Assembly: GCA_965240325.2 (NCBI GenBank)
Contig: OZ251250.1
Span: 186,001 to 250,000 of the forward strand
Direction of reading: 5' to 3'
Source of the DNA: Rebecca billardiae RCC1528
Lineage: Eukaryota; Protista; Haptophyta
Length of the DNA: 64,000 nucleotides
Shown: positions 19,905-53,046 of the stretch, piece by piece
Numbering within the stretch: position 1 is the first letter of the stretch
How the letters are laid out: each line of letters starts with the position of its first letter
Program-made: the position numbers and the translations under genes
Notes under the pieces: model-generated
Told to the model about the DNA's origin: nothing
The model's input: only the letters and a program-made list of their open reading frames with translations
Databases searched by the model: none

Positions 19905-21371
19905 ATGGCGTTCGCGCACGCCGTGGCCGAGCGCGTGGGGGCGCCGGGCGAGGCGGTGACGGCGCTCGCGTTCAACGCGCGCACGTCGGTGCTCGCGGTC
20001 GCCTCGAGCGCGACAATTGCGCTCTGGTGCGGCCGTGAGTCCGGCCAGCTGCTCGCCACCTCGCCGCGCGCCGCGCGCGCGGCCGAGCGCGCGCCGCGCG
20101 TGGCCGCAGCCGCGTCTTCGCCGCCGCCGCCGCTGCCGGCGGCGGCCGCGCATGGCGAGGAATGGCTGGTGTGGCGGCCGGACGGGCGGATGCTCGCGCT
20201 CCTCCAACGCCGCTGTGTCACCGTGTACGCCGTGCGCGCGCGCGCCTCCACGCCCGCCGACGACGGCGCGGCCGCGGGCATGACTGCAGTCGAGCGCGCT
20301 CTTCACGGGGAGGGCGGCGCGGCGGCGGGCGGCGGTGGCGGCGGTGGGCGGCGGGCCGCGCCGCGCGAGCGGCCGCCCGGCGTGCACCAGCTGCGCGAGG
20401 TCCGGCTGCACGGCCCCGGACTCGTCCGCGCCGTGGCGGACGCTTTTACCCTGCTAGTGACGACGGAGGATGGCGCTTTGACGAAACTGGAGTGGGCGCA
20501 GCCGCGGCCGCCGCCGCCGCGCCCGCCGACGGCGGGGAGCAAGGGCGCGCCGCGTGGGCCGCCGCCGCCGCCGCCGCCACGCCTGCTGCTCCGCACGCCC
20601 GCGCACGCGGCGCCGCCCGCCCGAGACCCTTCCGCCGGCACCGGCGCGCCGCCTCTGCCTCTGGCGCTCGAGCTCGCGCCGGCGCCGGCGGGAAGTTTCC
20701 ACGAAACTTCGGGCGGCGGCGGCGCCGCCGCGGTGGCGGGCGCGGCGGCGTGCTCGCCGCCGCCTGCGCCGCCGCCGCCCGCGCCACCGCCGCCACGGCC
20801 GCGCCCCGTGCCCGGCCGCGCGCGGCGGCCGAGTGGCGGGAAGTTTCCACGAAACTTCGGCTGCGGCGCGCCGCCGCTTGCAACGCAGCACTCGGCGCCG
20901 CCGCACGCGTCGCCGCGCGGCGCGGGCGCGAGCGCGGCGGCGGGCGCGGCGGCGGACGGCGCTCGGCCGGGCGACGAGCAGCCCGTCGCCGCCGCACGCG
21001 CCGACGCGGCCGAGCCCCGCCCGGACCACCCGGACCACCGCCCGGACTGTCCGGACCGCCGCCCGGACTTGCCCAGCCCGAGGCGGCAGCAGTCGCTGCC
21101 GGCGAGGCGCGTGCCGTGGCCAGGGCTGCTCCTCAGCGATGGCGGCGGGGGCGGCGGTGGCTGCAGCGCGGACGCCGGCGAGGAGGCGGCGGGCGGCGGG
21201 GCGGGGCGGGCCGCCGCACCGTTCCGCGTGACGCGCCTGCGACCAGACGCGCCGCCGCCGCGCGAGATTGCAATCTCGCAGGAGGGCTCGACGCGCGAGG
21301 GCGCGGCCCCGCGCGCGGAGGGCGCGGCGCCGCCCTGTGCCACGCCCGAGCGCGCACGCGGCGGCGCGCCC

Positions 21372-21406
<35 letters not shown>

Positions 21407-21803
21407 CGCCTCGCGAGATTGCAATCTCGCCGCCGCCGCCGCTCCCGAATGGCGGGCGGCCGAGCTGGCATGGTGCGCGCAGCTGGGCGTTCTCGCGGTG
21501 GCGGTGTGGCGCGGCGGCGAGATTGCAATCTCGCGAGGCGGCGGCGTGGGCGAGGCTGTGGGCGTCGCGCTGGCGTGCGCGCCTCCGCGCCGCGCGCGCG
21601 GCGGCCGAGATTGCAATCTCGCGCCCGGCGCGCAGCCGCGCCGCGCGCGGCTTGCGGACGCGCTTGGCGGCGGCGCCGCCGCGAAGGGCGCGCGGGCGGC
21701 GGGCGCGGGCGACGGTGCGGGTGCGGGCGGCGGGCCGCTAGTAACGCTCCTCCACCGCCCGCGCGCCCTCCGAGATTGCAATCTCGCGCCCGGCGGCCCC
21801 GCC

Positions 21804-21867
<64 letters not shown>

Positions 21868-23174
21868 GCCCGGCGGCCGCCGCCGAGCCGCCGCCGCCGC
21901 TGCCGCCGCCGCCCGCGCGCGAGGGCGCCGCACTCGCGCTCTGCGCGGCGCGCGCGCGGCTGGCCGTGGCATACGGCGCCGGTCCCAAAGTGCATGTGTA
22001 CGCGCTCGACGTGGGTAGTGCCGAGCAGCTGAGCACGCGTGCGCGCGCGCTCGGCGCGGCGGCGGCGGCGGCGGCGGGCGGCGCGGCGGCGGGCGGCGCG
22101 GCGGCGGCGAGCGGCGCGCCGTGCGCGGCGGCCGAGGCGGCCGCGCGCGGGGCCGTGCGCGCGCGCCGCGTCGCGACGATCGATCTCGGCGCAATCTCGC
22201 TCCATCTCGCCCCGAGCTCGGCGGCCGCGCGCGGCGGCGGCGGCGGTGGCGTGTGCTGGCTCGGCTGGCGGCCCGGCGGCGGCGGTGACGCCCTGGGCGT
22301 ATGCACGCGCGCGCCGCCCGCGCCGCGGCTGCTTGTGCTCGGCGCCGCGTCGGCCGGCGGCGAGCTCACCGCGGCCGTCCCGATCCGCGCCGCGCTCGGC
22401 GCGCGCGCGCGGCGCGCCGCGCTCGGCGCCGCGCCCGCGGTGGCGTGGGGAAAGGGCGGCGCATCATTGTGCGCCTCCGCGGGCTCGCCCGGCGGTTACG
22501 CCGGCGGTTACGCCGGCGGGTACGACGGGTACGCCGACGTGGCGCTGTGGGCGCCGGTCGCGGCGTGCGGTCGGCACACGGCCAGCTGGGGCGGCGCGGC
22601 GGTGGCGCCGGCGGCGGCGCCGGGCGGCGAGGGCGGCGCGCCGCGGCCGCGCGCCGCCTCCGTCGCCGCCGCCACCGCCGCCGAGGCGGGCGCGCGCGCG
22701 CACGCGCGCGCTCACGCCTCCGCCGTGCACCGCTGCGCGCGCGCGCGCGCGCCCGCGCCTCACGGCGCGCCGCCCGACGGGCCGAATCTGCATGGCGCGC
22801 CCCACGGGCCGAATCTGCATGGCGCGCCCCACGGGCCGAATCTGCATGGCGCGGAAGGCTGGCTGTGCGGGGGGCGGCCGGCGGCGGCGGCGGCGGCGCC
22901 GTCATCGGCGGCGCCGGCGGCGCGCGCTCTGCGCCGCAGCGAGGCGGGCGGCGGCGGCGGCGGCGCGCTGAGCGCGCGTCCGCTCGCCATGCTCGCCGCG
23001 GACCGCACCGTCCTGCTGCTGCACGCCGGCGGGCCGAAACTGCATGGCGGCGGCGGCGCGGCGCGGGGCGCGCCGCCGCCGCGCTGGGTGCCGCTCAGCG
23101 TGCCTCGCGAGTTCTGCTGCACGCGCCTCCTCCGCACACCGGCGGCGGCGGCTGGCGGCGGCGGCGCGGGCCGC

Positions 23175-23206
<32 letters not shown>

Positions 23207-23828
23207 CGCGCACCGCCGGAGCGAGCCGCCGTTACACTCGCCGTTACGCGCGCCGCCGTGTAACGGGCCGTTACGCGACGGCCCGCCGTGTAACGGGCCG
23301 GTGCGCGCCGCCGCGCTTAGCGAGGGCGGCACGCACCTCGCAGTGGCCTCTGACCACGGCCTCGCGACGTGCGCGCTGCGCGCCGCGCGCTGGCGGCTGT
23401 GCGCGCGCCCGGCGGACGATGCGAAATTGCATGCGCGCGCGCTCGGCTGGCTCGGGCCCGAGGTGGTGCTTGCGGTGTGCTCGGAGGGAGATTGCAATCT
23501 CGGCCCGGGCGTGCTCTGCGCGTTCGCGCGCACCGAGCCCTCCGCCGCCGACGCGCTGTGCGTGCTGCGCCTGCCCGGCGGCGGCGGAGTCGGCGGCGTC
23601 GGCGACGGTGGCGGCGGCGACGGTGGCGGCGGCGATGGCGGCGGTTGCGGCGGCGGCGCGCACGCAGATGTTGCGGACGGCGACGGAGGCGGCGATGGCG
23701 TGGAGGAGGAGGGCGAGGAGGGGGAGGAGGCGCGCTGCTGGGGTCTCCACGTGCACCGGCTCGCTGCCGGCGTCGAGGCGAGCGGCGGCGTGGGCGGCGG
23801 CGTCGGCGTCTCAAGCGATGGCGGCGGT

Positions 23829-23861
<33 letters not shown>

Positions 23862-24241
23862 GGCGGCGGCGGCGGCAGCGGCGGCGGCGGCGGCGGCGGC
23901 GGCGGCTGCGAGCTGCTGTGCGGCACAACGAGCCGCGTGCGCGCGGACGGCGGCGCGGAGGCCCTGCCGCCCGGCCCCGTGCGCCCCGCGCTCCCCGCGC
24001 CCCCCACCGCCTTCGTCGTCACCCTCGGGATCGGCCCATGCGTTTTCGTGGTGCTAGCAACTGTCTGGGCGGCGGCGGCGGCAGCGGCTCACAGCGGCGG
24101 TGGCGGCGGCGACGACGGTGGTGGCGGCTTCGGCGGCGGTGGCGGGCGTGGGGGCGCGGACGGGGCTGGCGCGCGCGACGGCGGCGCGGGCGCCGCGGCG
24201 CGAGCCGGCGCGGGCGGCACCGGCTTCTGGGGGGCCCTCTT

Positions 24242-24274
<33 letters not shown>

Positions 24275-27200
24275 AAGCGGCGGCGGCGGCGGCGCGACGA
24301 GCATGGCGCGCCGGCCGCGCGTCGCGCTGTCGGTGGTCGCGACGTTCGCGTGCGACGAGGGCGGGGCGCACGCGGCGTGCGAGGCGGGGCGGCCGTGCGC
24401 GCTGCTCTACGCGCAGCTCACGCAGCCGCCGGCGCCGCTGCCCGACACCGCCTCCATCCCCATCGCCGACACCGGCCGCCATGCTGACGCCGCGGCCGGC
24501 ACAGAGCGCTTCGTCCATTCAGCATGGCCGCCGCCCGCCGCGCTGCGCCATGTGGTGCTCACGGCCTCGCACCCGGGGGAGCGCTTCGAGCTGCGCGGCG
24601 GCGGCAGCGCGGCGGCGGGGCCAAGGGCGCGCAGCGCGAGCGCGCACGACGAGCCCACCGCGCGCGAGCGCGCGAGCGCGGCCGCCGGCGCGGGCGCCGC
24701 GGCCGCGGCGCACGCTATGCCTACGCCGCTGCGTCCGCACGGCGCGTCCGCCGCGGATGCCTCGGCGGTCGGGCGCGCGGCGCCGCCGTCGCGGCACGCG
24801 CACGCGCCCGTCGCGCCCGAGCCCGAGGAGCCGCCCCCGCCGCGCCTCGCGCGGCCGTTCGGCGGCCTCGCCGCCGGCACGAAAGTGCTTGGCTGGGGCG
24901 CCCTCGCGAGCGAGCCGCGCGCGCGCGCGCGCGCGCGCGCGCACGGTGCGCCACGGTCGCCGCCGAGGCCCGGCGACGGCGTGGCGCCGGCGGGCGTGCC
25001 GTCGGCACCCGCCACGCCGACGCCGGGCTCGGCTGCGGCCGAGGCCCACAGTCGCCCGCCCTCGCCGCCGCCAACCGTCGTGTCCGCCATCGTCGTTGAT
25101 CAGAATCTGTGCGACGCCGCGGCGGCGGCGGCGGCGGCGGCGGCGGCCTCGGCGGCGGCGACGGCGGCGGCGGCGGCGGCGGCTGACGTGGGCTGCGCGG
25201 AGGCGGCGGCGACGACAGCGATGACGACGGCGGAGGCGGGCGCGGGGCGCGGCGCCACGCGGCGGCACCCAGCCGCGCGCACCGCGGCTGCGTCCGCGGA
25301 GACGGCGGCGGGTGCCAGCGCACCCGTGCGCGCCGCCGCATGTCCCGCCGCAGCCAGCGGCGCAGCCGGCGCGGCCGGCGGCGGCAGTGCGCAGCGGGCG
25401 GCGGCGGGTGGCGGCGGGGCGGGCGACGGCGCGGCGTGGGGCCCGCCGGGGCTGACGCGCGCGCGCTCGCACTCCGCCCCGCCACCACTCCGCGCCGCCG
25501 CCGCCGCCGCGGCATCAGCCACGCCCGAGCCGCCGGCCGCGGCCGGCCGAGATTGCAATCTCGCGGCCGCGGCCGCGGCCGGCGCGCCGGCGGCGGCCGG
25601 CGGCGGCGCGGCGGAGTGCGCCCGCGCCCTCGCCGTGCTTGGCGTGCTCTGCGCCGACGGCGTCCTGCGCACGCGCACGCTGGGCATCCGGGCGGAGCTG
25701 CTCCGGCCGCCGCCGCGCCCGCCGCCGCGGCAGCCGCAGCAGCCGCGCTCGCGCGCGCCGCCGCCGCCGCCCGCCGCGGCGCGCTCGCACAATCACGATG
25801 GCGGCGGCTCGTCAGGCGGCGACGCCCCTGCGGCTGAGCCGCCGCCGTGCGCCCTCGGCGCGTGGCAGGCGCACGACCTCGGCGCGGCCGAGCTGATTGG
25901 CTGGCACGTGAGTATCCCGAGCGTACCCGCGCTACCCGCATTACCCGCGCTACCCGCATCACCCGCGTTACCCGCCGCGGCCGCAGCGGACGGTGGCACC
26001 GGCGGCGCCGCCGCCGCCGCCGACGACGACGCTCGCGTGCTCGAGGTGGGTAATGCGGGTAAAGACGACGACGCGCGCGTGCTCGAGGTGGGCAATGCGG
26101 GTAATGCGGGTAATGACGACGACGCGCGCGTGCTCGAGGTGGGCAATGCGGGTAATGCGGGTAATGACGACGACGCGCGCGTGCTCGAGGTGTGGACTGT
26201 GCGCGCAGCAGCGCGGCGGCAGTCGGCCGACGGCAGCCGCAGCAGCTGCGCGGGCTGGCACGGCGCCGACGCCGACGCCGACGGCGGCGGCGACGGCGGC
26301 GGTGGCGGCGGCGAGGGCGGGGGCACCGTCCAGTGGCACAGCATCAGCCTGGGGCGCGCGCGCGGCCGCGTCGGCCGCGCGCGGCTGCGCCGCGCGCACA
26401 CTCAGCCGCGGCACGGCGCAGACAAGTGCGAGGTGGCGCTCGCTGTTGTGCCGCCCCTCGGCGCGCTGGTGAGCGCGCGCGGCGCGGACGGTGGCGCGGA
26501 CACCGACGCCGACGCCGGCGGCGGTGAGGAGCCTGCCGGAATGGACGAACCCGGCGCGATGGACGAAGCCGAAGAGGCCGCGGGCGGCGGCGGCGCCGCG
26601 GGCGCGCGGCCGCGCGGCGGCGGCGGCGGCGACGGCGGCGGTGGCGGCGCGCGCGGGCTGTGGCCGGCGCCGGTGGGCGGGCTCCCGCGCCTTGTGCGCA
26701 GCTCGACCGCCCACGCGGCGCTTCGCGCTCTGCTCGACGACGCGCTGGCCGCGTCGGGCGAGATTGCAATCTCGCCAGGTGGAGCCGACGCGCCGCCAGC
26801 GCGCGCCGCCGAGGCTACGGCGCACTTCGCCGAGGCGCTCGCGCGCGCGGCGCACGCGGTGCGCACCGACGGCGGCGTAGACGGCGGCGCCGGGGCGCAC
26901 GTGTTGATCGCGCTGATTTGCGAACTAGCCGAGGAGGCGGGCTCGGGCTCGGCGCTGCGGCTTGCGCTGCGGCTGGCGCGCGAGGCGACCGCGCGGGCGG
27001 CGCACGCGCCAGCGGAGCACGCGCGGCACGCCGGCGCGGCGCAGCCGCACGCCGCACAGCCGCACAGCCGCACGGCGGCGGCGGCATCGCCGCCGCGCGG
27101 CCTCGCCCCCGCCGCGCCGCACAGCCCCACGCCGCCGCCGTTGCCGCCGCCGCCGCCGCGCGGGCTCGCGCCTCTGACGTTTGAATCGTTGCTCGTACGC

Positions 27201-27964: not shown

Positions 27965-30900
27965 ATGGGCGAGCCGCGCCGTCGCAGCCGGCCGGAGATA
28001 CGGATCGTGCTGCCCGCGGAGGACGACCGCGCCGAGGTCGTCCCCGGCGTGCGCACCGAGCCCTCCCTCTCCGCCGCCGCCTCGTCCGCGTCGTCGGCCG
28101 CCACAGAGTCATCGCGCGGGCCGGCGACGGATTCGAGCGCGCACGCGGGCGGCGCGGCGTCGACGGCGGGCGCGAGCGAGATGCTCTCGCCCGAGGTGCG
28201 CGCCGTCCTCTCGCGCCAGGGCCGCTTCACCGACTTCTCGCGCTCCACCGACACCGAGTCGCCGCCGCGCTCGCCCTCAGACGTGCAGTCTCGGCTCGAG
28301 GCGGCGAGGCGGCAGGGTCGCGTCGTGCGCCGCCGGATCCAGACGCCGTCCATCGTGGTGGGCGCGGTGCTCACGATGGCGGGGATTTTGCTGCTCTTCA
28401 CCCTCGCCGCAACCGACTACGCCCACGCGGGCGCGCTCCTCATCGTCCCCGGCGTGCTCATCATGCTTGCCGCTCTCATGCCGACGGACACGGCGGTGGT
28501 GCGACTGGTGGCGCTGCTGGTGTCGGTGTGCGCCGCCATCGTGGGCGCGTTCTACGTCGCGTCGGCGCTGGTGCGCGCGCGCGTCGGCGGTCGCGCGCGG
28601 AGCGGCGCGCGATCGGTGCCCTTGCGCGCGCACGCGTGCTGCTCCGCCGGAGGTGCGCTGACCCTAACCCTAACCCTAACCCTATGCCTGCGCATCGACG
28701 CCGCTGCCCACACCCTTGGCCGGCGGCTCTCGCAGTGGCTGCAGCCCGTCGAGCTCGCGACCGACGGCGCCGGCCGTCTGCGCTGCGCCCTGCTCGCGGG
28801 TAGCGCTGCGCAGCCGCAGCCGTCGTCGGCCGCGCGCGACGCGGAGGCAAATTCCTCTGACCGGGACGGCGGCGGCGGCGGCTCGACGGGTGCGGGGGAT
28901 CAGAGGGTGCGGTGCTGGGCGTTCATGGCGAGCGCGCTCTTCCTCGGGCTGCTCGGCGCGATCGCGTGGGCGCTCGCGCTGCGCACGCTCTCCGACGTCC
29001 TCCGCAGGCTGCCCACGCGCGCGCTGCTCGACCACATCTGGGCGGGCGTTGGTGCGCGCGCGCACGCTGCACTGTGGTGGTGGGCGCGCGTGTGGCCGGC
29101 GTCTGCTCGCGCCCTCTCTCGTCCACACGCCCCTCCTTCCCCTCCTTCCTTGCTCTTCCCTGTTTTGGATTTGTGTTGTTTCATTCCCTTCCCATTGTTG
29201 CCGCGGCGCCAGGCTTTGCATACCTCGCGTGCGCACTGCTCAACGTCGGCGCAGTCGTGGGCTACGCGGTGGCGGGCGTGCGGCCGCCGCCGTCGCAGCT
29301 GGGCACGATGGCGGCGCTCACCGCCTCGCTGTGCGTGTGCGGCGGGCTGGCGGCGACGCCCGGCTTCCGCCGCCGCGTCCACGCCTTCCTCTCCGCGCGC
29401 GGCGAGGCCGTCGCCACCGCCGCGGGCGTCTCCGCCCTCCTCGGCGACCGCACCCCGACCGAGGCCCTTGCCATCGCCGAGCGAAACCTGCGGTGCGTGC
29501 GCGCCGACCAACTCGACTATGAGACTCTGCTCGGCAACGCGCCCTCGCGCGCGCTGTACGAGATCTCGAGGCCGGCGAGGCTGGGCGAGATCGACTTCTT
29601 CCTCAGCCACTCGTATGCGCCGCGCGCGCGGAAATGCGGATGCACTCGGACGAATCACTACGTACTCCGAATGATTTACGACCGCGCGACGCCCGCCGCG
29701 CCGCGGCCGCGCGCCGCGCGCGCCCCTGCGCCGCCACGCGCAGCTGGTCGGACTGCCCCGAGGGCAAGTGGGCCGCGCTGCAGTCGTGGCGCGCCGACTT
29801 TGTGCGCGCGCACGGCCGCGAGCCCAGGCTGTTCCTTGACAAGCTCTGCATTCCGCCCGACGGTATGCTCATGCATGCGCGCAACTGCCGCAGCCGCGTG
29901 CATGTGCATGCGCAGCCGCAGCCGCAGCCGCAGCCGCGGCCGCAGCCGCGGTCGCAGCCGCCGTAGCAGCGGGCGCTGCTACGGCGGCTGCGGCTGCCAG
30001 CTGCGGCATGGCGGCCGCCGCGAGGGCGGCGGCGGCGGTGGCCACTGCGGCTTTGCGGGTGTGCCGCTGGCTGCGGCCGCACTGCCACAGTACAGCTGAC
30101 CGCTTGCTTCCCCTGCCTGCGCGGCCACGCCCTCGGCCCCCCGCCCCGCCGCCCCCCGCGCGTGCGCGCCGCGCGCGCGCGCAGACATCGAGACCAACCT
30201 GGTGTGCCTCCCCGTCTTCCTCGCCGCGTGCAACAAGCTCCTCGTGCTGCCCGGGGACACGTACCTCACCCGCTTGTGGGCGGTCGTTGGTGCGTGCAGT
30301 CCGGTGCGGTCCGGTGCAGTCCGTTGGTCCGGGCGCGAAAGGCGAGGGGCGCGCATGCGCGCGCGCGCGCGCGCCGCGGCGGCTCACGCCAGCCGCCACG
30401 CCGCGCCCCGCCGTGCACGTGCACGCAGAGCTGTACGTCTTCCTCGAGATGGGCGGCACGCTCGAGCAGATCGAGCTGCGCACCGTGCGCTGCCCCCGAC
30501 GAAACACGCGCCCGCCGCACGCCGACGCGACGGTCGCGCCCGAGGCGCGCAACGCTGCGCCAGCGCCAGTGCCGGTGGCTCGTGAGGGCTTGTCCGTCGA
30601 CGGCGGCGGCGGGACGGACGAGCCTGCGACGAGCCTCGGCCGCGCGTGCAGCGCCGCGCTCATCCCGAACAGCCCGTTCTCGCGCCTGCGCCGCGTGAAC
30701 GCCCAGCGCGGCTACACGTGCTCGTGCGAGCTGCCCCACCCGGCCAACCAGCAGCAGAACAATGGCGGCCAGCTGGATTTGGCGGAGGCATGCCGCCGGT
30801 TCGACGTGCGGCAGGCGAACACGACGGTCGCGGCGGACAAGGAGCGGCTGCTCACGATGATCGAGAACGGCTTCGGCACGCTCCGCGCCTTCAACGCCGT

Positions 30901-31468
30901 CGCGCGCAGCCTCCTCGCCGCCGCTCTGGAGCGTGAGGAGGCTGTTCGGTCGATGCCACCAACTGCGCCCACGTCGCGCGCGCGCACACCCGTGCGCGCG
31001 CCGCGGCTGGCGCCGATCGCGGCGGAGTCGCGCGCGTTCCTGCCGCCCCCGCCGATGCGCGCGCTGACCGACGACGCGAGCGGCGCGCTGGCCTCGAGCT
31101 TCGGCAGCATACGCCGGATCGCGCGCCAGACGCAGTCGGCGCCGCTGCCGCAGACGCTGCACCGGCAGCAGTCGGCGCCGGCCGTCGTCGACAACACGCG
31201 CAAGCGGCGCGCAGCGTCGGCCGCGACGGTCGGCGTGAGCTTCGACGAGAACGCGACGGAGGGCGTGCCCGCAGCACGCAGCGGCGCCGAGGACGACGCC
31301 GCGGCCGCCGTGCCTGCGAGCGGGTGCGCGCCGACGGGCGGCAGCAGCGCAGAACCTGCAGAACCGCCGCTGCCCAAGCAGCGGGCACAGCGCGAGCCGC
31401 CCGAGTGTCGACCGTGCGCGCCGCCGGCGTCCCTCGTGCTCGAGTCGGCCGACGCCTCGCCTCGGTGA
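27965..31468 (+). CDS. Multi-pass membrane protein with a cytosolic TIR-like domain; exons 27965-28570, 28736-29051, 29213-29612, 29744-29862, 30185-30289, 30429-31468
   Basis: The spliced product reads IDFFLSHS|WSDCPEGKWAAL..FVRAHGREPRLFLDKLCIPPD|DIETNLVCLPVFLAACNKLLVLPGDTYLTRLWAVV|ELYVFLEMGG. This follows the TIR pattern FLSH / (W/F)LD / Y..R.W...E and is preceded by about six hydrophobic helices. All five introns are GT-AG and phase-consistent. Confidence 0.8.
28661..28685 (-). repeat. Interstitial telomere-like repeat (CCCTAA) x~4, in intron 1 of the TIR-like gene
   Basis: ACCCTAACCCTAACCCTAACCCTAT. Confidence 0.9.
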
Positions 31469-31831
31469 GGGCAGTGCGGGTGCGCAGCAGCGCCTGCCAG
31501 GGGGCGCTGACTCGACGAATCACTCGCCGGCATCACGGCATTAATCACGGTCACGCGCCATCGGGCTGACAGGTGCCTGCCAGCGCGTGGTCATCGCGTC
31601 ATCATAGATGTCTGCTCAGCAGATCATCAAGATGCTGCTGATGAGACTGCTGCCGTTATACTCGTCGGAGAAGCAGCCGCCGTATAGGGGGCGCGCGTAC
31701 CGTTGGCGCGGCCTAGCAGGACCGCGGATCGTCACGCGTGACCGCGCGTGCTTGCCATGCTGAGGCAACGCGGTAGCACGGACTGGCGCAGCCGGACAGC
31801 TAGTGGCGGACACTAGTGGCACGGCCGGCCG

Positions 31832-32869
31832 CTACACACGACTCTGGCTACTGCCGACGCTCCTCCCGCCACCGGCGCCGCCGCCGCTGAGCCTGAGTCC
31901 GGGCAGCAGTGGCGAGTGCTCCCGGGCAAACACGGCGTGCAGGTCGGCAAAGTCTGAAAAGCCTACGCGCCCGCCGCGCGCGTAGCGCGGGAGCTCGTCG
32001 TCCAGGAACGCGCCACGCGCCGCGTCCGCCGCCCCGCCCGCCCCCGAGGCCGCCACCGGACCCCCGTCGAACACCGCCCGGACCGCCTCCAACGCGACCG
32101 CCCCGCCGTCATCCGGACCGAGCCGGTCGAACGCTGCGCGCAGCTCAGCGAGCCGGCGGTCCGAGTAGCGCAGGTTGCGCAGGGCGTCGCGCGCGGTGCC
32201 GTCGAGGAAGACGGCGGCCGGCGTGAAGAGCACCATCGCGCTGAGCGCCGTGCACTCCAGCGCCCAGAAGAGGTACGGCGGCACCTCGAGATCGCGCGAG
32301 ATTGCGAGGCCGAGCACGAGAACGACGATGGCGGCAAAGGCGGCGCCTCCGACAAGGAGGATCGCTGTCTCGACGGCGCCGCGCTTCGGGTCGAGGCGGA
32401 GCATCAGGGCGAAGTGCGCGAGCGCCGCGATCGAGAAGAGCGCCACCGCGACTGTGTGCGCGTCCTTGCTCCACGTCACCGTGAGCACGAGGAAAGCGCC
32501 GAAGCCGACGTGAAACGCGACGAGGCTTGCATAGAACGCGGCGCGTGCGCGCGCGCCGGCATGGGTGATGGTGCTGCGCGAGGCGACAGGGGACCACATC
32601 ATCACGATCGGCACGATGAACAGCGCGGCCATCGCGCCCGTGCCCGCGGGCGTCGAGATGAAGAACGAGACCTGGTGCTTGGTCCGGAGCTCCGCGGCTG
32701 TGCCCTCGCCGTACCCGCGGCGCAGCGGGATGACTTGGCGCTCCGAGAGGACGGGGAGCAGCCAGATGTACAACACGGGCGCAAGCGTGCCCACCACGAC
32801 CCACGCAGCGGCCCAGAGCGTGCCGCCAGGCGCCGTCATCGGGCGCGCCATCTGTCGGCCCAGCGCCAT
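31832..32869 (-). CDS. ~6-TM membrane protein (possibly Frag1/DRAM/DUF998-like) with a degenerate C-terminal EF-hand pair
   Basis: Six hydrophobic segments, with VSFFIS, AHTVAV.LF and FWALE motifs. The C-terminal ELRAAFDRLGPDDGGAVALEAV and GRVGFSDF are EF-hand-like. Intronless. Confidence 0.6.
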   Translation of the reverse strand: MALGRQMARPMTAPGGTLWAAAWVVVGTLAPVLYIWLLPVLSERQVIPLRRGYGEGTAAELRTKHQVSFFISTPAGTGAMAALFIVPIVMMWSPVASRSTITHAGARARAAFYASLVAFHVGFGAFLVLTVTWSKDAHTVAVALFSIAALAHFALMLRLDPKRGAVETAILLVGGAAFAAIVVLVLGLAISRDLEVPPYLFWALECTALSAMVLFTPAAVFLDGTARDALRNLRYSDRRLAELRAAFDRLGPDDGGAVALEAVRAVFDGGPVAASGAGGAADAARGAFLDDELPRYARGGRVGFSDFADLHAVFAREHSPLLPGLRLSGGGAGGGRSVGSSQSRV

Positions 32870-33018
32870 CGCGGGTGCGTTGGCCGTTGTGCCACCCTGT
32901 CCGTGTGGGGTCGTGCCCGCACGGGCGGGCGCGGCCTTTGACCTTTGTCACCTTTCACGGTTTCACCAATGATTCACCCAGCCTGAAGTTGAGCTCCGAC
33001 GACACTGGCTCTCTGGTG

Positions 33019-33747
33019 CTACGCGCCGCCGCCGGCGAGTACGCTCTCCGCGTATGCCGGGCGCTCGCACAGCCGGAGGTACCACTCGTGCGTGCGCGGC
33101 AGCGAGCGGCTTGCCGGCACGCCCGCGCTCTCGAGCGCGAACAGCCGTCGCGCGTGCACACCCGCCGTCAGGTCGGCCATGCTGAGCGAGTCGCCAAGGA
33201 CGAACGGCCCGGCGCGGCGGAGCTGCGCCTCGAGCGCGGCCCAGACCGTGAGTACGGCGGACACCTCGCGCCCGTTCACCACGCTCGGCGTGCCATCCGC
33301 GCCCGTCGAGAGCTGCAGCGCCGAGCCGCGCGGATACCCGGACTCTTGGACGAGTCCGGAATACACGGGGCTCAGCGTTGGCTGCACCGACGACTCGCCC
33401 CACTCGAGCCACTGCCAGGCCAGGGCGACGGCCTCGTGCGTGGGCGGGTACATGGTGGTTCCGGCGCTCCACCGGGCGCACACGTACGAGGCGATCGTGT
33501 TCGACTCGTTGAGCACGAGCTGCGCCGCGCCGTCCGCCGCCGAGTCGCCGCCGCCATGGCCGCCACCGCCGCCGAGCTCAAAGGTGGCGACTGGCACGGT
33601 GCCCTTTGGGTTGAGCTCGAGGAAGTGAGGGTCCGCACGGAGCTCGGCGGTCGGGCGCTCTACCCGGCTGAATGGCGCGCCTACCTCGCGCAGCGCCCAG
33701 AGCACCTTGGCGACGCGCGAGGTGCGCACACCGTACACGACCGCCAT
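33019..33747 (-). CDS. Glutathione S-transferase
   Basis: TSRVAKVLWALREVG, FLELNPKGTVPV, VLNESNTIASY, QWLEW, FVLGDSLSMADL and WYLRLCERPAY cover the GST N- and C-domains. Intronless. Confidence 0.92.
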   Translation of the reverse strand: MAVVYGVRTSRVAKVLWALREVGAPFSRVERPTAELRADPHFLELNPKGTVPVATFELGGGGGHGGGDSAADGAAQLVLNESNTIASYVCARWSAGTTMYPPTHEAVALAWQWLEWGESSVQPTLSPVYSGLVQESGYPRGSALQLSTGADGTPSVVNGREVSAVLTVWAALEAQLRRAGPFVLGDSLSMADLTAGVHARRLFALESAGVPASRSLPRTHEWYLRLCERPAYAESVLAGGGA

Positions 33748-33922
33748 CGCAGCGTGAGCGCGTGGCTGGGGCCGGACCTTCCGGCGCCCACGTTTGAAAA
33801 CGCGCGCAGTCTGTGGAAGCGAAGTCGACGACAGCCTCCATAAGTCCTAGCCCAATCGGGACGGCCGCCCGAATAATACTAGCGGCCGGCGCCAACCGCC
33901 GTCTCGCGAGTGCGCGGGCCCC
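33748..33922. promoter_or_regulatory. Probable bidirectional promoter between GST and queF (175 bp)
   Basis: Divergent ATGs at 33747 and 33923; CCAAT at ~33852; AT-richer patch GAATAATACT. Confidence 0.45.
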
Positions 33923-34852
33923 ATGTCGCCGACCCCTCCGCTCGCCCAGCAGCGCAGCGACGACGGCGGCTTCGGCGTGCTCGGCGAGCAGACCAGCGTG
34001 CCCGAGAAGTACGACCCATCCGTCCTCTTCCCCGTCCCCAGGGACCGCGCCCGTCGCGCCTTCGGCCTCGCCGGCGCCGCGTCGCTCCCGTTCGAGGGCG
34101 AAGACGTCTGGAACGCTTACGAGCTCTCGTGGCTCGGGCCGAACGGCGTGCCGCGCCGCCACGTGCTCGAGCTGCGCATGGATCTGGGCTCGCCCAACCT
34201 CGTCGAGTCCAAGTCGCTCAAGCTCTACCTCAACTCGCTCAACAACCAGCGCTTCGAGTCGGACGCGGCGCTTCTCTCGACGATCCAGAACGATCTGAAG
34301 AACGTTCTCGGCGGCTGGTGGATCGGCGTGGAGCTCGCGCTGCACGGGCACGAGCACGCGGGGAGCGTGAGCGCGCGCGTGCCGCCCGCCGACACCTTCG
34401 AGTGCATCGACGCCGCCCTCGACGGCGCCGAGCTCAGCCCGGCCGTGCTGGAGGGCTCGGCGAAGGATGGCCCACGCCACCTCAAGCTGGCGCCGGGCGC
34501 GGACGCGGAGCCGGCGGTGACCGAGCGGCTGGTGTGCCACCAGCTGCGCACGCTCTGCCCGATCACGCGGCAGCCCGACTGGGGCAGCGTGTACGTCGAG
34601 TACGCCGGGCCCCGCCTCGACCGCGCCGCGCTCCTCACGTACATCTGCTCGCTCCGAAATACCGTCCTGCTGCACGAGCAGACCGTCGAAGCAATTTGGC
34701 TCGCGATCCATGGGGCGGCGCAGCCGACGGAGCTGCGCGTGACGGGGCGGTTCGCGCGGCGCGGGGGGATCGACATCAACCCGACGCGGCAGATGCGCGC
34801 GGCGGACGCGGTCAAGGCGGACGCGGCGGCGGCACCCCCGCCACCGCACTGA
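33923..34852 (+). CDS. queF: NADPH-dependent 7-cyano-7-deazaguanine (preQ0) reductase, bimodular (type II, YqcD-like)
   Basis: LG..T..P..YDPSVLFPVPR; PF.G.DVWNAYELSWL..NG.P; the QueF motif SPNLVESKSLKLYLNS; catalytic CPITRQPDWGS (C212, D219); HEQ (H251, E252); terminal RRGGIDINP.R. All type II QueF blocks are present in order. Confidence 0.96.
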   Translation: MSPTPPLAQQRSDDGGFGVLGEQTSVPEKYDPSVLFPVPRDRARRAFGLAGAASLPFEGEDVWNAYELSWLGPNGVPRRHVLELRMDLGSPNLVESKSLKLYLNSLNNQRFESDAALLSTIQNDLKNVLGGWWIGVELALHGHEHAGSVSARVPPADTFECIDAALDGAELSPAVLEGSAKDGPRHLKLAPGADAEPAVTERLVCHQLRTLCPITRQPDWGSVYVEYAGPRLDRAALLTYICSLRNTVLLHEQTVEAIWLAIHGAAQPTELRVTGRFARRGGIDINPTRQMRAADAVKADAAAAPPPPH

Positions 34853-35287
34853 ACCAACCCTTCGCGGCGGCCGACGCAAGAACGCTCGCTTTATATTGCG
34901 CGGTGCGCACAGACACGGCCGGCGGTCGCCACCCACAGCTGTACACGGGCGAGCGCCGAGCGGCGCGTCTCGCACGTACGCGCCCGGCTGGCTGGTCCGC
35001 GGCCCGTCCCCGGCCCGAAGCCGCGTGCGCCGGCACCGCATCGTCACGCTGGCGGGCCCGGCCGCCCGGACGCGTCAGCGCCGCTCAGTCCGGTCGGGGG
35101 CCACCCCGTTGCGGCCAGGGCAGATCGAGACCTTCCGCGTTCCGGCCGCCGGGTCCCGGTCCGCTGCCAGTACGGAGTGACGGACTACGGTCCGCTAACG
35201 CTTATTGATCGAGGCTCCGGCTTCGGTCCACCACCCCCAGTCCGGTCGTCACACTCACTCAGGACGAGCGCGAGTTACTGTTATACT

Positions 35288-36098
35288 CAGGGTTCGAGAA
35301 TTCGGTCCGAATGAGTAATGACCCACCCTTCGGATTCGGACCCCGAATTTCGGGGTCCGAATTTCGGGGTGGGCCACATCCGGACCCGAAATGTGGCCTC
35401 CCCGGTGGGCGGCTGGCCTGCAATGGCGTCGGCGGATTCGCGTGCCGTCGACGTCATGCCGTGCCCAACTAATATGCTCGCAGCGGCCGTGCCGGGCCAG
35501 CAGCTGGTGGTGTGGTTCGGTCAGAGCCCGGTACACCGATTGTCAGTGCAGTTTCGCGGTGCGGGGAACCGTGTCCGTGGTGACGCGCGTTGACCGGCAG
35601 CGCAACGGCAGCCGGTCTGTGGGCGCCGTGTTCTCGGACGGGGACACTGTCCTCGGCGCCAAGCCTGCCTTGACTTGACTCCTGCCATCTACTGAGTGGT
35701 TGGCGCGGCAAGCAGTAGGCACTGCCTGTGCTCGGCAGCGCTGCGGAGCCCGACTCGCACGGTGTGCTGAGCACAACGCCCGCGCGGGCGCGGACCGGCG
35801 GATGGGACCAGCCATTCGTCGAGATCGAGTCTGATCCTGATGTAGTTAGGGTGAGATCCATGGCTGTGCAGAACTGTGACATTCACTGCGTGCGGACTGG
35901 TGCTGGCGCAGTGACCGACTCACCGTCGCTGTTATGCCCGGGCACGCCACTGTGGCGTGCCATGCTGGGAGTCCGGATCACACGCCCCGACCCGGACAGC
36001 CAGAATTCCCCCCCGAAGATGGAGGCCAGAATTCGGATTCCCCCCCGAAAATTCCCCCCCGAACCATTCGGGCGGGGGGAATTCGGTCACGAACCCTG
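35288..36098. mobile_element. Non-autonomous hAT element, 811 bp, 8-bp target-site duplication
   Basis: Ends CAGGGTTCG / CGAACCCTG; perfect GTTATACT at 35280-35287 and 36099-36106; dense subterminal CCGAAT/ATTCGG motifs at both ends. Confidence 0.93.
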
Positions 36099-36572
36099 GT
36101 TATACTGTACTCTAAGCTATCAATATCGTCATCATACATCCGTCGTCGGCCGCATCCGATATTGACATAATCACTCACTATATATATATACTCAGTCACA
36201 ATAAGTCACAGCAGCATCAGCACGACTGACTATAGCAGTGACTACGTCTACAGTAGTCTAAGTACAGACTAGTCTCGACTGCGCGTCTGCGGTCTGCACG
36301 TCTGCCGCGTCGGCCCGCATCCGCCAATAATATATATAATTTTAATTATAAATTTTAATAACTCACGGGCGCAGAGACGCCAGACGGCACCGCCGTGGCG
36401 GCCGCGCCTGCCGCCAGCCTGCACACTAAATGGCTACGACTACATATGATATTGAGATGCTTATTTCCGAGCTGACGACGATGATGACTACGCCGCGCGA
36501 TGTTTGGCACGGCGTCGTGACGCGGTCGCGGGCGACCCCGGGGACGGTCACGGTGACGCGAGCGTCACCGTG

Positions 36573-51890: not shown

Positions 51891-53014
51891 ATGGAGGGCC
51901 CGCCGGCCGAGCACCGCGGCGCGCGGGGGGGCGAGCGGCCGGGTGAGCGCTGCGGCGACTCGGACTACGCGGTGGGCGAGCGGGTGTGGTACACCGCCGA
52001 CCTCGCCAACCGCTCGACCCGCTGCACCGCGCGCATCCTCCGCTGGAGGCAAGCCGAGTGCCGGCGGCGCGCCGGCCGCGGCGCGCGCTCGGGCGCGCGC
52101 GCGGACGCGGTCGAGGTGGAGCTGCTGCACATCGCGCGGAACACGCGCGAGTGGGTGATGCTGGAGCACGTGGCCGCGTACTCCGACGCGCACCTCGCGC
52201 CCGCGCCGCCGCGCGCGCGCGCGACCGTCGCCGCGGGCGGCGGCGCGCCGGATGCGGTGGTGCCGCGCGGTGGCAGTGGCGGTGGCGTGGCTCCGACGGC
52301 GGGAGCGGCAAGCGCATCCCAAAGGGCGCGGGCGCCTGCGGGGCCGCCGGCGCCCGTGCCCTTTGAAGTGCGCCTGCTGCTCCCGACGTCCGAGCTGCCC
52401 CGCGCCGCGGACCCGCCGCCCGACGGTCTGGCGGCCGGCCGTGGCGAGCGCTCCGGCGGCGGCGCCGGCGGCGGCGGCGGCGCGCACGCGGCCGAGCGCA
52501 GCCGCGGGCTGGGCGCGGCGGGCTCCGGCCCGCGGACGTCCTCCTCACCCGGCGCGTGCGCGCACGCCGCCGCCGACGACGCGAGCTGCGCGCTCCTCTC
52601 CGCCGGACTGCCTGACGCCGCCGCGTCGGTGCCGCCGGCGCGCACCGCCGCGCCGCAGCCACCGCCGGGGCCAGGCACCGGACCGCCGGGGCCAGGCACC
52701 GGACCGCCGGCGGCGGGCACCGGACAGGGTGGGTGCATGACATCCGCGGCGCCGGTGCCATCGGTGGTGCAGGAGCTGACGGACGCGGCGGCGCGGGCGA
52801 TGGCGCGGCGCCGCGCGGCGGGCGGCGCAGGGCTCGTACGGTCTGGGCTAGGCGGCCCTACATTAGGGTTAGGGTTAGGGTTAGGGTTAGGGTTAGGGTT
52901 AGGGTTAGGGTTAGGGTTAGGCGGTCCGTCCACGGCCGCCCGAAGCCACGGCAGTGTGACCGGCCTGGCAGACGCGGGCGGCGGCGGTGGCGAAATGGAC
53001 GCGGACGACGACGG

Positions 53015-53046
<32 letters not shown>

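What the first reader, a model, noticed from the sequence alone, without database searches (positions are those of the whole stretch)
33923..34852. Intact bacterial-type queF (de novo queuosine pathway nitrile reductase) in a eukaryotic nuclear genome
Seen: a full-length 309-aa bimodular QueF with ESKSLKLY, catalytic Cys212/Asp219, His251-Glu252 and RRGGIDINP. It is intronless, matches host GC/codon style, has no obvious targeting peptide, and sits among spliceosomal-intron genes and eukaryotic transposons. Established: QueF reduces preQ0 to preQ1 in bacterial queuosine synthesis (FolE-QueD-QueE-QueC-QueF-Tgt-QueA-QueG/H), whereas eukaryotes are generally held to salvage queuine with QTRT1/QTRT2. 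Inference: this alga acquired queF horizontally. It may make or salvage 7-deazaguanine precursors (for example bacterial preQ0) for tRNA or another deazapurine product, which would be an unexpected eukaryotic deazaguanine pathway.
Basis: partly seen in the sequence, partly recalled or inferred. Interest (0 to 1): 0.9.

Follow-up and report, generated by a model that had tools for sequence, protein, structure and literature searches.

The report
Bacterial-type QueF gene in algal nucleus
This GC-rich haptophyte-like alga carries an intact nuclear gene for QueF, the bacterial enzyme that turns preQ0 into preQ1 on the way to the tRNA base queuosine. The gene is not a private acquisition: it belongs to an old QueF clade shared by haptophytes, a cryptophyte, diatom-like and prasinophyte algae that I could not find described in the literature.

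Summary
ORF 33923-34852 (+) encodes a 309-aa two-domain (bimodular) QueF. Every catalytic and NADPH-binding residue that is invariant in 119 homologues is present. An AlphaFold model (pLDDT 88) matches Vibrio cholerae QueF. The gene has no intron, uses the host's codons (GC3 0.94; RSCU r 0.97 against its neighbours), and lies in a window with RIC1 and HECT genes.

This is not a lineage-specific transfer. The protein is sister to Pavlovales sequences inside a strongly supported clade (SH-aLRT 99-100, long stem). That clade holds every named eukaryote sequence and no named bacterium: Diacronema, Pavlovales CCMP2436, Prymnesium, Chroomonas, Pycnococcus/Pseudoscourfieldia, a diatom-like contig and three MMETSP transcripts. 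The five relatives' genomic loci I examined have eukaryotic gene contexts.

The clade scores below the NCBIfam QueF cut-off. It has also lost the second, protective cysteine: Ala in 40 of 44 members, Thr254 here.

The most likely role is cytosolic reduction of preQ0 to preQ1, feeding a bacterial-type queuosine route. Whether preQ0 is made or salvaged, and whether this gene is expressed, could not be tested. The scan noted this same stretch twice more on this genome (s1-365394, s1-365588), not on other DNA.

The parts
33923..34852 (+). queF coding sequence: 309 aa plus stop, single exon
   Evidence: ORF list; Pfam QueF_N + QueF; TIGR03138 at 244.9 bits; PDB V. cholerae QueF E 2e-46; AF2 model pLDDT 88 with TM 0.81-0.85 (normalised to the target) to Vc QueF
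34004..34312 (+). N-terminal T-fold domain (QueF_N, aa 28-130)
   Evidence: Pfam PF14819, E 1e-34
34205..34228 (+). QueF motif E95-S-K-S-L-K-L-Y102 (NADPH-binding signature)
   Evidence: Read in the sequence; invariant or nearly so in 119 homologues
34574..34798 (+). C-terminal catalytic T-fold domain (QueF, aa 218-292)
   Evidence: Pfam PF14489, E 4e-22
34556..34558 (+). Cys212 codon, the catalytic thiol (equals V. cholerae C194)
   Evidence: Aligns to the residue changed in the C194A structure; invariant in 119 of 119
34577..34579 (+). Asp219 codon (equals V. cholerae D201)
   Evidence: Invariant in 119 of 119; alignment to 3bp1
34673..34678 (+). His251-Glu252 codons (equal V. cholerae H233-E234)
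   Evidence: Aligns to the residue changed in the H233A structure; invariant
34682..34684 (+). Thr254 codon, at the position of the second, protective Cys (V. cholerae C236, B. subtilis C99)
   Evidence: Cys in 71 of 75 bacterial rows; Ala in 40 of 44 eukaryote-clade rows; Thr only here. PDB 5udg's title names the Cys55-Cys99 disulfide
34757..34783 (+). R279-R-G-G-I-D-I-N-P287 motif; R280 equals V. cholerae R262
   Evidence: Aligns to the R262L mutant chain; R279, R280, G281 and G282 invariant
33748..33922 (.). 175-bp spacer between the divergent GST and queF start codons; presumed shared promoter region (inferred only)
   Evidence: Coordinates; sequence; no sigma-70-like promoter found

Best explanation
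The ORF is a functional, nuclear-encoded and probably cytosolic NADPH-dependent preQ0 reductase (bimodular QueF, EC 1.7.1.13). By analogy with the solved bacterial enzymes, Cys212 would attack the nitrile of 7-cyano-7-deazaguanine (preQ0) to form a covalent thioimide. Asp219 and His251 would relay protons, Glu252 would hold the deazaguanine ring, and the ESKSLKLY motif with R280 would bind NADPH. Two hydride transfers would then give 7-aminomethyl-7-deazaguanine (preQ1). The gene descends from one ancient bacterial-to-eukaryote transfer and was inherited vertically in this haptophyte-like lineage. It belongs to a distinct algal QueF clade that has lost the protective second cysteine. The preQ1 most likely feeds a bacterial-type tRNA-guanine transglycosylase and QueA plus QueG/H, giving queuosine in tRNA. 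That would let the alga use preQ0 and not only queuine. Shown here: gene identity, an intact active site, the fold, nuclear context and clade membership. Inferred: enzyme activity, cytosolic location, the downstream pathway and the source of preQ0.
For: Domains and structure. All universally invariant residues are kept. The PDB point mutants pin C212, H251 and R280. Host-like GC3 and codon usage. RIC1 and HECT in the window. Three independent Logan assemblies are 100% collinear with window 30836-35346. The eukaryotic clade has SH-aLRT 99-100 in three trees, with the window sister to Pavlovales. Orthologues sit on nuclear scaffolds or chromosomes of Diacronema (beside VPS53), Prymnesium (beside VPS13) and Pycnococcus (beside WW-domain and protein-kinase genes), and on a contig that also encodes a diatom pyrenoid-shell protein. 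Five clade members, among them Pavlovales CCMP2436 and Chroomonas, are recorded in the MMETSP transcript collection. There is no N-terminal extension. A 2025 paper reports bacterial-type TGT, QueA, QueG and YhhQ in green and red algae (PMC12301720). Unchecked scan notes report a QueA-QueH fusion and a chlamydial-type TGT elsewhere in this genome.
Against: No transcript evidence for this gene could be obtained, because no sequencing run was listed. No pathway partner was verified here. The score on the NCBIfam QueF equivalog model is below its cut-off (244.9 against 293.45 bits), as for the seven other clade members tested. This protein ties for the most deviant member of its clade at clade-conserved columns: 7 of 82 against a median of 1. 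Four of those changes (E247T, G249L, F250L, A254T) cluster beside the catalytic His-Glu. That could mean an altered pocket or relaxed constraint. The source of preQ0 is unknown.
Confidence: 0.7

Rival explanations
1. QueF is the fifth step of a complete endogenous de novo pathway (GTP cyclohydrolase I, QueD, QueE, QueC, QueF, then TGT, QueA, QueG/H). On this reading these algae make queuosine themselves.
For: QueF is useful only if preQ0 is available. The gene has been kept in at least four algal phyla, including diatom-like lineages that do not feed by phagocytosis. Notes on the later pathway steps exist for this genome.
Against: None of the 4301 first-stage notes on this genome mentions QueC, QueD or QueE, although that is weak evidence. 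The Chloropicon paper found only the late steps plus a preQ0/preQ1 transporter in green algae. Many bacteria keep QueF purely for preQ0 salvage (PMC5699537).
Confidence: 0.17
2. The enzyme works outside tRNA queuosine synthesis. It might supply preQ1 for a 7-deazaguanine DNA modification or a deazapurine metabolite, remove imported preQ0, or reduce another nitrile.
For: 7-Deazaguanines are used in bacterial and phage DNA and in antibiotics (PMC5699537). The window protein has unusual substitutions next to the substrate-binding His-Glu. It has no organelle-targeting peptide, whereas the algal late-step enzymes were predicted to be mitochondrial.
Against: All residues that recognise preQ0 and NADPH in the solved enzymes are invariant across the clade. 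No DpdA-like or toyocamycin-type partner is known here. The unusual substitutions are private to this one sequence, not to the clade.
Confidence: 0.08
3. The copy in this lineage is losing or has changed its function (relaxed constraint), even though the reading frame is open.
For: Seven deviations at 82 clade-conserved columns, against a median of 1, including F250L beside the catalytic His. The terminal branch is the longest in the Pavlovales group, at 0.39-0.58.
Against: The ORF is intact, with a very strong third-position codon bias (GC3 0.935). None of the 40 columns invariant across 50 homologues is changed. This is the only sampled member of a deep lineage, so a long branch is expected.
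Confidence: 0.04
4. The gene is bacterial contamination or a chimeric assembly.
For: The gene has no intron and its family is bacterial. I saw no read-level data.
Against: Codon usage matches the neighbours. Three separate assemblies reproduce the ORF345-GST-queF block. Its nearest relatives are haptophyte nuclear genes at 53-57% identity, against 38-47% for the bacterial hits. The neighbouring GST is also closest to Diacronema.
Confidence: 0.01

Closest known systems
Bimodular (type II, YqcD-type) QueF of Proteobacteria, such as V. cholerae QueF (PDB 3bp1, 3s19, 4ghm)
   Same: The same two T-fold domains. The QueF motif is in the N-terminal domain, and Cys, Asp, His-Glu and RRGG(I/L)DINP are in the C-terminal domain. 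Sequence identity is 37-39% and the model superposes at TM 0.81-0.85 (normalised to the target).
   Different: It is nuclear and eukaryotic. It scores below the TIGR03138 cut-off. The second cysteine (Vc C236) is Thr here. The inter-domain linker is longer. There are clade-specific residues, for example G221, where most bacteria have Ala, and F277, where most bacteria have Tyr.
Algal QueF clade (Diacronema lutheri KFE25_014195, Pavlovales sp. CCMP2436, Prymnesium parvum AB1Y20_001889, Chroomonas CCMP1168, Pycnococcus provasolii XRB03385.1, Pseudoscourfieldia marina XRB18111.1)
   Same: The window protein is a member, sister to the Pavlovales sequences at 53-57% identity. Like the other members whose loci I examined, it has no intron. 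Like most members, it has no targeting peptide and has lost the second Cys.
   Different: It is among the most deviant members at clade-conserved positions (E247T, G249L, F250L, A254T and three others). Only here is the gene head-to-head with a GST; the Diacronema GST and queF lie on different scaffolds.
Bacterial-type queuosine salvage in Chloropicon and red algae (BL-TGT, QueA, QueG, YhhQ; PMC12301720)
   Same: Both are bacterial queuosine-pathway enzymes encoded in algal nuclei, and both imply use of precursors other than queuine.
   Different: That paper starts at preQ1 and does not mention QueF. Its enzymes are predicted to be mitochondrial, whereas this QueF has no presequence. QueF moves the entry point one step upstream, to preQ0.
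Unimodular (type I, YkvM-type) QueF of B. subtilis and the archaeal QueF-like amidinotransferase
   Same: The same T-fold and the same thioimide-forming Cys.
   Different: Those are single-domain homo-oligomers. QueF-like was matched only over about 100 residues at 20-22% identity. From my own knowledge, untested here, QueF-like lacks the NADPH motif and makes archaeosine. The window protein is bimodular and keeps the NADPH motif.

Membership tests
Bimodular QueF (NADPH-dependent preQ0 reductase, EC 1.7.1.13) | Two tandem tunnel-fold domains (QueF_N + QueF) | tested here: met
   Pfam hits on both domains. The AF2 model matches V. cholerae QueF over about 265 residues, TM 0.81-0.85 normalised to the target.
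Bimodular QueF (NADPH-dependent preQ0 reductase, EC 1.7.1.13) | QueF motif E(S/L)K(S/A)hK(L/Y)(Y/F/W) for NADPH binding | tested here: met
   E95-S-K-S-L-K-L-Y102, invariant or nearly so in 119 homologues.
Bimodular QueF (NADPH-dependent preQ0 reductase, EC 1.7.1.13) | Catalytic Cys forming the thioimide (Vc C194), with Asp (Vc D201), His-Glu (Vc H233-E234) and Arg (Vc R262) | tested here: met
   C212, D219, H251, E252 and R280. The positions are fixed by the C194A, H233A and R262L PDB chains and are invariant.
Bimodular QueF (NADPH-dependent preQ0 reductase, EC 1.7.1.13) | Score at or above the curated NCBIfam TIGR03138 equivalog cut-off (293.45 bits) | tested here: not met
   244.9 bits here. 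Seven other eukaryote-clade members score 246-289, and three bacterial members 333-379. This is a clade-wide divergence, not a defect of this gene.
Bimodular QueF (NADPH-dependent preQ0 reductase, EC 1.7.1.13) | Second cysteine able to form a protective disulfide with the catalytic Cys (Bs C99, Vc C236). It is conserved but accessory. | tested here: not met
   Thr254 here; Ala in 40 of 44 clade members; Cys in 71 of 75 bacteria.
Bimodular QueF (NADPH-dependent preQ0 reductase, EC 1.7.1.13) | Measured conversion of preQ0 to preQ1 with NADPH | not testable with these tools
   This needs an enzyme assay or complementation of E. coli delta-queF.
Eukaryotic (algal) QueF clade | Groups with named eukaryotic sequences and apart from all bacterial ones | tested here: met
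   SH-aLRT 100 (44 rows), 100 (47 rows) and 99 (20 selected rows against 80 named bacteria), with stems of 0.44-0.82. The window is sister to Pavlovales at 99.
Eukaryotic (algal) QueF clade | Located among eukaryotic nuclear genes | tested here: met
   Window: RIC1 and HECT. Relatives: VPS53, VPS13, WW domain, protein kinase, kinesin and diatom pyrenoid-shell neighbours.
Bacterial-type queuosine route in algae (as in PMC12301720) | Bacterial-type TGT, QueA and QueG/H present in the same genome | not tested
   Only unchecked first-stage notes on other pieces of this genome (s1-353000, s1-363512).
Bacterial-type queuosine route in algae (as in PMC12301720) | Organelle-targeting presequence | tested here: not met
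   Only 27 residues precede the domain, as in bacteria. There is an in-frame stop upstream and the N-terminus is homologous to that of Diacronema. A few other clade members do carry hydrophobic N-terminal extensions.
De novo preQ0 synthesis (FolE, QueD, QueE, QueC) | QueC and QueE genes present in the genome | not testable with these tools
   Only this 64-kb window is readable. No scan note mentions these genes. The protein searches cannot be restricted by organism.

The most novel reading that the evidence does not exclude
Marine algae of several phyla (haptophytes, cryptophytes, diatom-like lineages, prasinophytes) run a complete bacterial-type pathway through preQ0 to queuosine. They would then be producers of this micronutrient, not only consumers, which overturns the rule that eukaryotes can only salvage queuine.
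Probability: 0.15. Interest if true: 0.85.

Novelty: new member of a known kind. Interest (0 to 1): 0.5.

Why it matters
Reviews and recent papers state that eukaryotes obtain queuosine only by salvaging queuine. In 2025, bacterial-type late steps starting from preQ1 were reported in a few green and red algae. A conserved nuclear QueF in haptophytes, a cryptophyte, diatom-like algae and prasinophytes moves the entry point one step upstream, to preQ0. It suggests that abundant marine primary producers use, or perhaps make, 7-deazaguanine precursors. That bears on how the micronutrient queuosine flows through marine food webs and on alga-bacteria exchange. The clade-wide loss of the protective cysteine is a concrete, testable biochemical difference. 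The enzyme itself is ordinary, and homologues are already named automatically in databases. The value therefore lies in the unremarked distribution, not in a new mechanism.

Tried and rejected
1. Expression and linkage by reads: the look-up of sequencing runs listed no run for 32800-35600 or for the gene alone (one search failed as busy), so read laying could not be used. The three Logan contigs that carry the gene are collinear with the genome and all end at 35346, inside a repeat. They do not tell RNA from DNA.

2. Intron in a homologue: the split QueF on L008 is caused by frameshifts in a contig of 0.7x coverage, not by an intron.

3. Functional pairing with the GST: rejected as a conserved feature. 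The Diacronema GST orthologue (48% identity) and queF lie on different scaffolds. The five relatives' genomic loci examined have different neighbours from one another, and none has a GST beside queF.

4. Domain fusions in the longer clade members: none found. The extra length is linker or N-terminus.

5. Donor lineage: a single-protein scan of bacterial genomes with the nearest sister (P0198) found nothing. The profile scan returned mostly Beta- and Gammaproteobacteria at 35-44% identity. In the tree the nearest rows are unnamed metagenomic sequences plus one Syntrophaceae bin, and the immediate sister has weak support (28). The donor is unresolved.

6. Pathway partners (QueC, QueD, QueE, YhhQ, QTRT1, QNG1): no scan notes exist, and there is no way to search this genome or restrict the protein searches by taxon.

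7. Literature: ten full-text searches combining QueF, preQ0 or queuosine with haptophyte, alga, diatom, phytoplankton or Emiliania found no description of an algal QueF. Zallot 2014 and Yuan 2019 are not held.

8. Bacterial promoter or terminator signals: none above chance.

Full report
**Observation**

The ORF at 33923-34852 (+) is real: ATG to TGA, 309 aa. An in-frame stop lies 25 codons upstream, with no other start codon between it and the ATG. Pfam finds the two domains of bimodular QueF: QueF_N (aa 28-130, E 1e-34) and QueF (aa 218-292, E 4e-22).

The closest solved structures are V. cholerae QueF (E 2e-46, 37-39% identity). The deposited point mutants C194A, H233A and R262L let me fix the equivalences C212, H251 and R280 directly from the alignments.

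I aligned 44 eukaryote-clade and 75 bacterial homologues. Twenty-one motif positions, including every catalytic residue, are identical in all 119 rows: E95, S96, K97, S98, K100, L101, C212, T215, Q217, P218, D219, H251, E252, E256, R279, R280, G281, G282, I285, P287 and R289. The remaining motif positions, such as L99, Y102, P213, D284 and N286, are nearly invariant.

An AlphaFold2 model built on 50 sequences has mean pLDDT 88 and pTM 0.87. It superposes on V. cholerae QueF at TM 0.81-0.85, normalised to the target. Unimodular B. subtilis QueF, archaeal QueF-like and GTP cyclohydrolase I follow as more distant tunnel-fold matches.

**Is it a gene of this eukaryote?**

- *Composition.* GC3 of the ORF is 0.935, against 0.83-0.92 in five neighbouring ORFs. 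Relative synonymous codon usage correlates at r=0.97.
- *Window content.* The window also encodes a RIC1 beta-propeller and a HECT domain.
- *Independent assemblies.* Three Logan assemblies (ERR14847148, ERR14847150, ERR14847151) reproduce the ORF345-GST-queF block at 100% identity. All three end at 35346, inside a repeat.
- *Bacterial signals.* There is no sigma-70-like promoter.
- *Neighbouring GST.* The GST at 33019-33747 (-) has its best named relative in Diacronema lutheri, at 48% identity.

Contamination or chimerism is therefore very unlikely, although I saw no read-level data.

**Relatives**

The best database hits are not bacterial:

| Hit | Identity |
|---|---|
| Diacronema lutheri | 57% |
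| Pavlovales sp. CCMP2436 | 53% |
| Prymnesium parvum | 50% |
| Chroomonas sp. CCMP1168, three anonymous MMETSP transcripts, many unnamed metagenomic proteins | 44-58% |
| Beta- and Gammaproteobacteria | 38-47% |

In a tree of 119 sequences, every named eukaryote falls in one 44-row clade with SH-aLRT 100 and a stem of 0.44. The window protein is sister to a Pavlovales group at 99.

I then added 144 representatives from an exhaustive search of 1.8 billion cluster representatives. This enlarged the clade to 47 rows, still at 100. One of the added clusters contains Pycnococcus provasolii and Pseudoscourfieldia marina, which are prasinophyte green algae. NCBI already names these proteins as this reductase.

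A third tree set 20 clade members against 80 named bacterial genomes. It kept the clade at 99, with a stem of 0.82.

Genomic context confirms eukaryotic residence:

| Organism or contig | Setting of queF |
|---|---|
| Diacronema | 385-kb scaffold, between VPS53 and an NBP35-like gene |
| Prymnesium | 3.2-Mb chromosome, beside VPS13 |
| Pycnococcus | 714-kb chromosome, among WW-domain and protein-kinase genes |
| Metagenomic contig L009 | with a diatom pyrenoid-shell protein |
| Metagenomic contig L007 | with WW, CAP and DnaJ-TPR genes |

All five of these loci are single-exon genes; the low-coverage contig L008 is treated under negative results. The internal groups (Pavlovales, Prymnesiales, a large diatom-containing group, and a cryptophyte plus prasinophyte group) roughly follow the organisms.

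The transfer was ancient and the gene was inherited here. The bacterial donor is unresolved. The nearest rows are unnamed metagenomic proteins and one Syntrophaceae bin, and the immediate sister has weak support.

**What distinguishes the clade**

- *Family cut-off.* The window protein and the seven other clade members tested score 245-289 bits on NCBIfam TIGR03138, below its 293.45 cut-off. Three bacterial members score 333-379.
- *Second cysteine.* The position three residues after the catalytic His is V. cholerae C236 and B. subtilis C99. In PDB 5udg, C99 is shown in a disulfide with the catalytic Cys55. This position is Cys in 71 of 75 bacteria. It is Ala in 40 of 44 clade members and Thr254 here. 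The algal enzymes therefore cannot form that disulfide. That the loss reflects life in a reducing cytosol is my inference.
- *N-terminus.* Most clade members, including this one and the other haptophytes, have no N-terminal extension. This predicts a cytosolic enzyme. Two small subgroups carry hydrophobic N-terminal segments. The longer members contain no extra domains.

**What distinguishes this copy**

At the 82 columns conserved in at least 90% of the clade, this protein deviates 7 times, against a median of 1. The changes are G43A, L47F, F108N, E247T, G249L, F250L and A254T. Four of them flank the His-Glu pair.

None of the 40 columns invariant across a 50-sequence alignment is altered. 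I read this as a divergent but probably active orthologue on a long, sparsely sampled branch. Relaxed constraint or a retuned pocket cannot be excluded.

**Mechanism and role**

The chemistry (thioimide on Cys212, two NADPH-dependent reductions, preQ0 to preQ1) is inferred from the retained residues and the solved bacterial complexes. It was not tested.

For the pathway, the papers I could read say that eukaryotes salvage queuine only (PMC5699537, PMC11695743). The 2025 Chloropicon paper reports bacterial-like TGT, QueA, QueG and the YhhQ transporter in green and red algae, and proposes that they use imported preQ1. It does not mention QueF (PMC12301720).

Unchecked first-stage notes on other pieces of this same genome describe a QueA-QueH fusion and a WHEP-fused chlamydial-type TGT. 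If those notes hold, the alga would have every step from preQ0 to queuosine in tRNA.

I could not determine whether preQ0 is made (QueC, QueD, QueE) or taken up. No notes mention those genes, only this window is readable, and the protein searches cannot be limited to a taxon. I put salvage ahead of de novo synthesis, at roughly 0.55 to 0.17, but this is the main open point.

**Negative results**

- The head-to-head GST is not conserved next to queF in any relative examined.
- The apparent split gene on L008 is a frameshift artefact.
- No sequencing run was listed, so expression of this particular gene is unshown. Five clade members are recorded in the MMETSP transcript collection.

**Novelty**

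Ten full-text searches found no paper describing an algal or eukaryotic QueF. Two key subscription papers were not available. Public databases already attach the QueF name to several algal homologues.

The enzyme is a known kind, and the gene is a new member of an existing but undescribed eukaryotic clade. I score interest at 0.5. It is a modest surprise for queuosine specialists and makes 'can eukaryotes use or make preQ0?' directly testable. It is not a new mechanism.

Noticed in passing
window 35282-36104: An element of about 820 bp, bounded by 18-nt inverted repeats (83% complementary), lies about 430 bp downstream of the queF stop. It contains short CCGAATTTCGGGG-type repeats. All three independent Logan contigs end at 35346, inside it, as expected for a dispersed repeat.
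   Followed up: partly
window 33019-33747 (-): A single-exon GST (GST_N_2 + GST_C_2) lies head-to-head with queF, 175 bp away. Its family is narrow: only 12 proteins at E<=1e-10 in 5.8 billion. The best named hit is Diacronema lutheri at 48% identity, and the nearest solved structures are bacterial-type GSTs. The pairing with queF is not conserved.
   Followed up: partly
window 31832-32869 (-): A 345-aa ORF next to the GST has no Pfam match. It was called as a gene on a Logan contig (partly on a second).
   Followed up: no
proteins P0024, P0025, P0034, P0039, P0041 (relatives, not in the window): Two subgroups of the algal QueF clade carry N-terminal extensions of roughly 20-50 aa with a hydrophobic, Ala/Leu/Gly-rich segment. 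This may be a membrane anchor or a targeting signal, unlike the haptophyte proteins.
   Followed up: no
L010 (Pycnococcus provasolii CP150562.1) against P0306 (Pseudoscourfieldia marina): Nearly identical QueF proteins are annotated as 420 aa and 310 aa. The extra 110 residues in Pycnococcus look like an over-extended start rather than a presequence.
   Followed up: no
window 20000-26000 and 52000-58000: Blocks of 80-83% GC coincide with very long ORFs (2600 and 2080 aa) that carry the RIC1 propeller and HECT matches. At this GC content, ORF length alone says little about exon structure.
   Followed up: no
L008 6001-6835: A diatom-group QueF on a contig of 0.7x coverage is broken into three frames by sequencing errors and was called as two genes. 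Such fragments inflate the protein clusters (P0135, P0137, P0138).
   Followed up: yes
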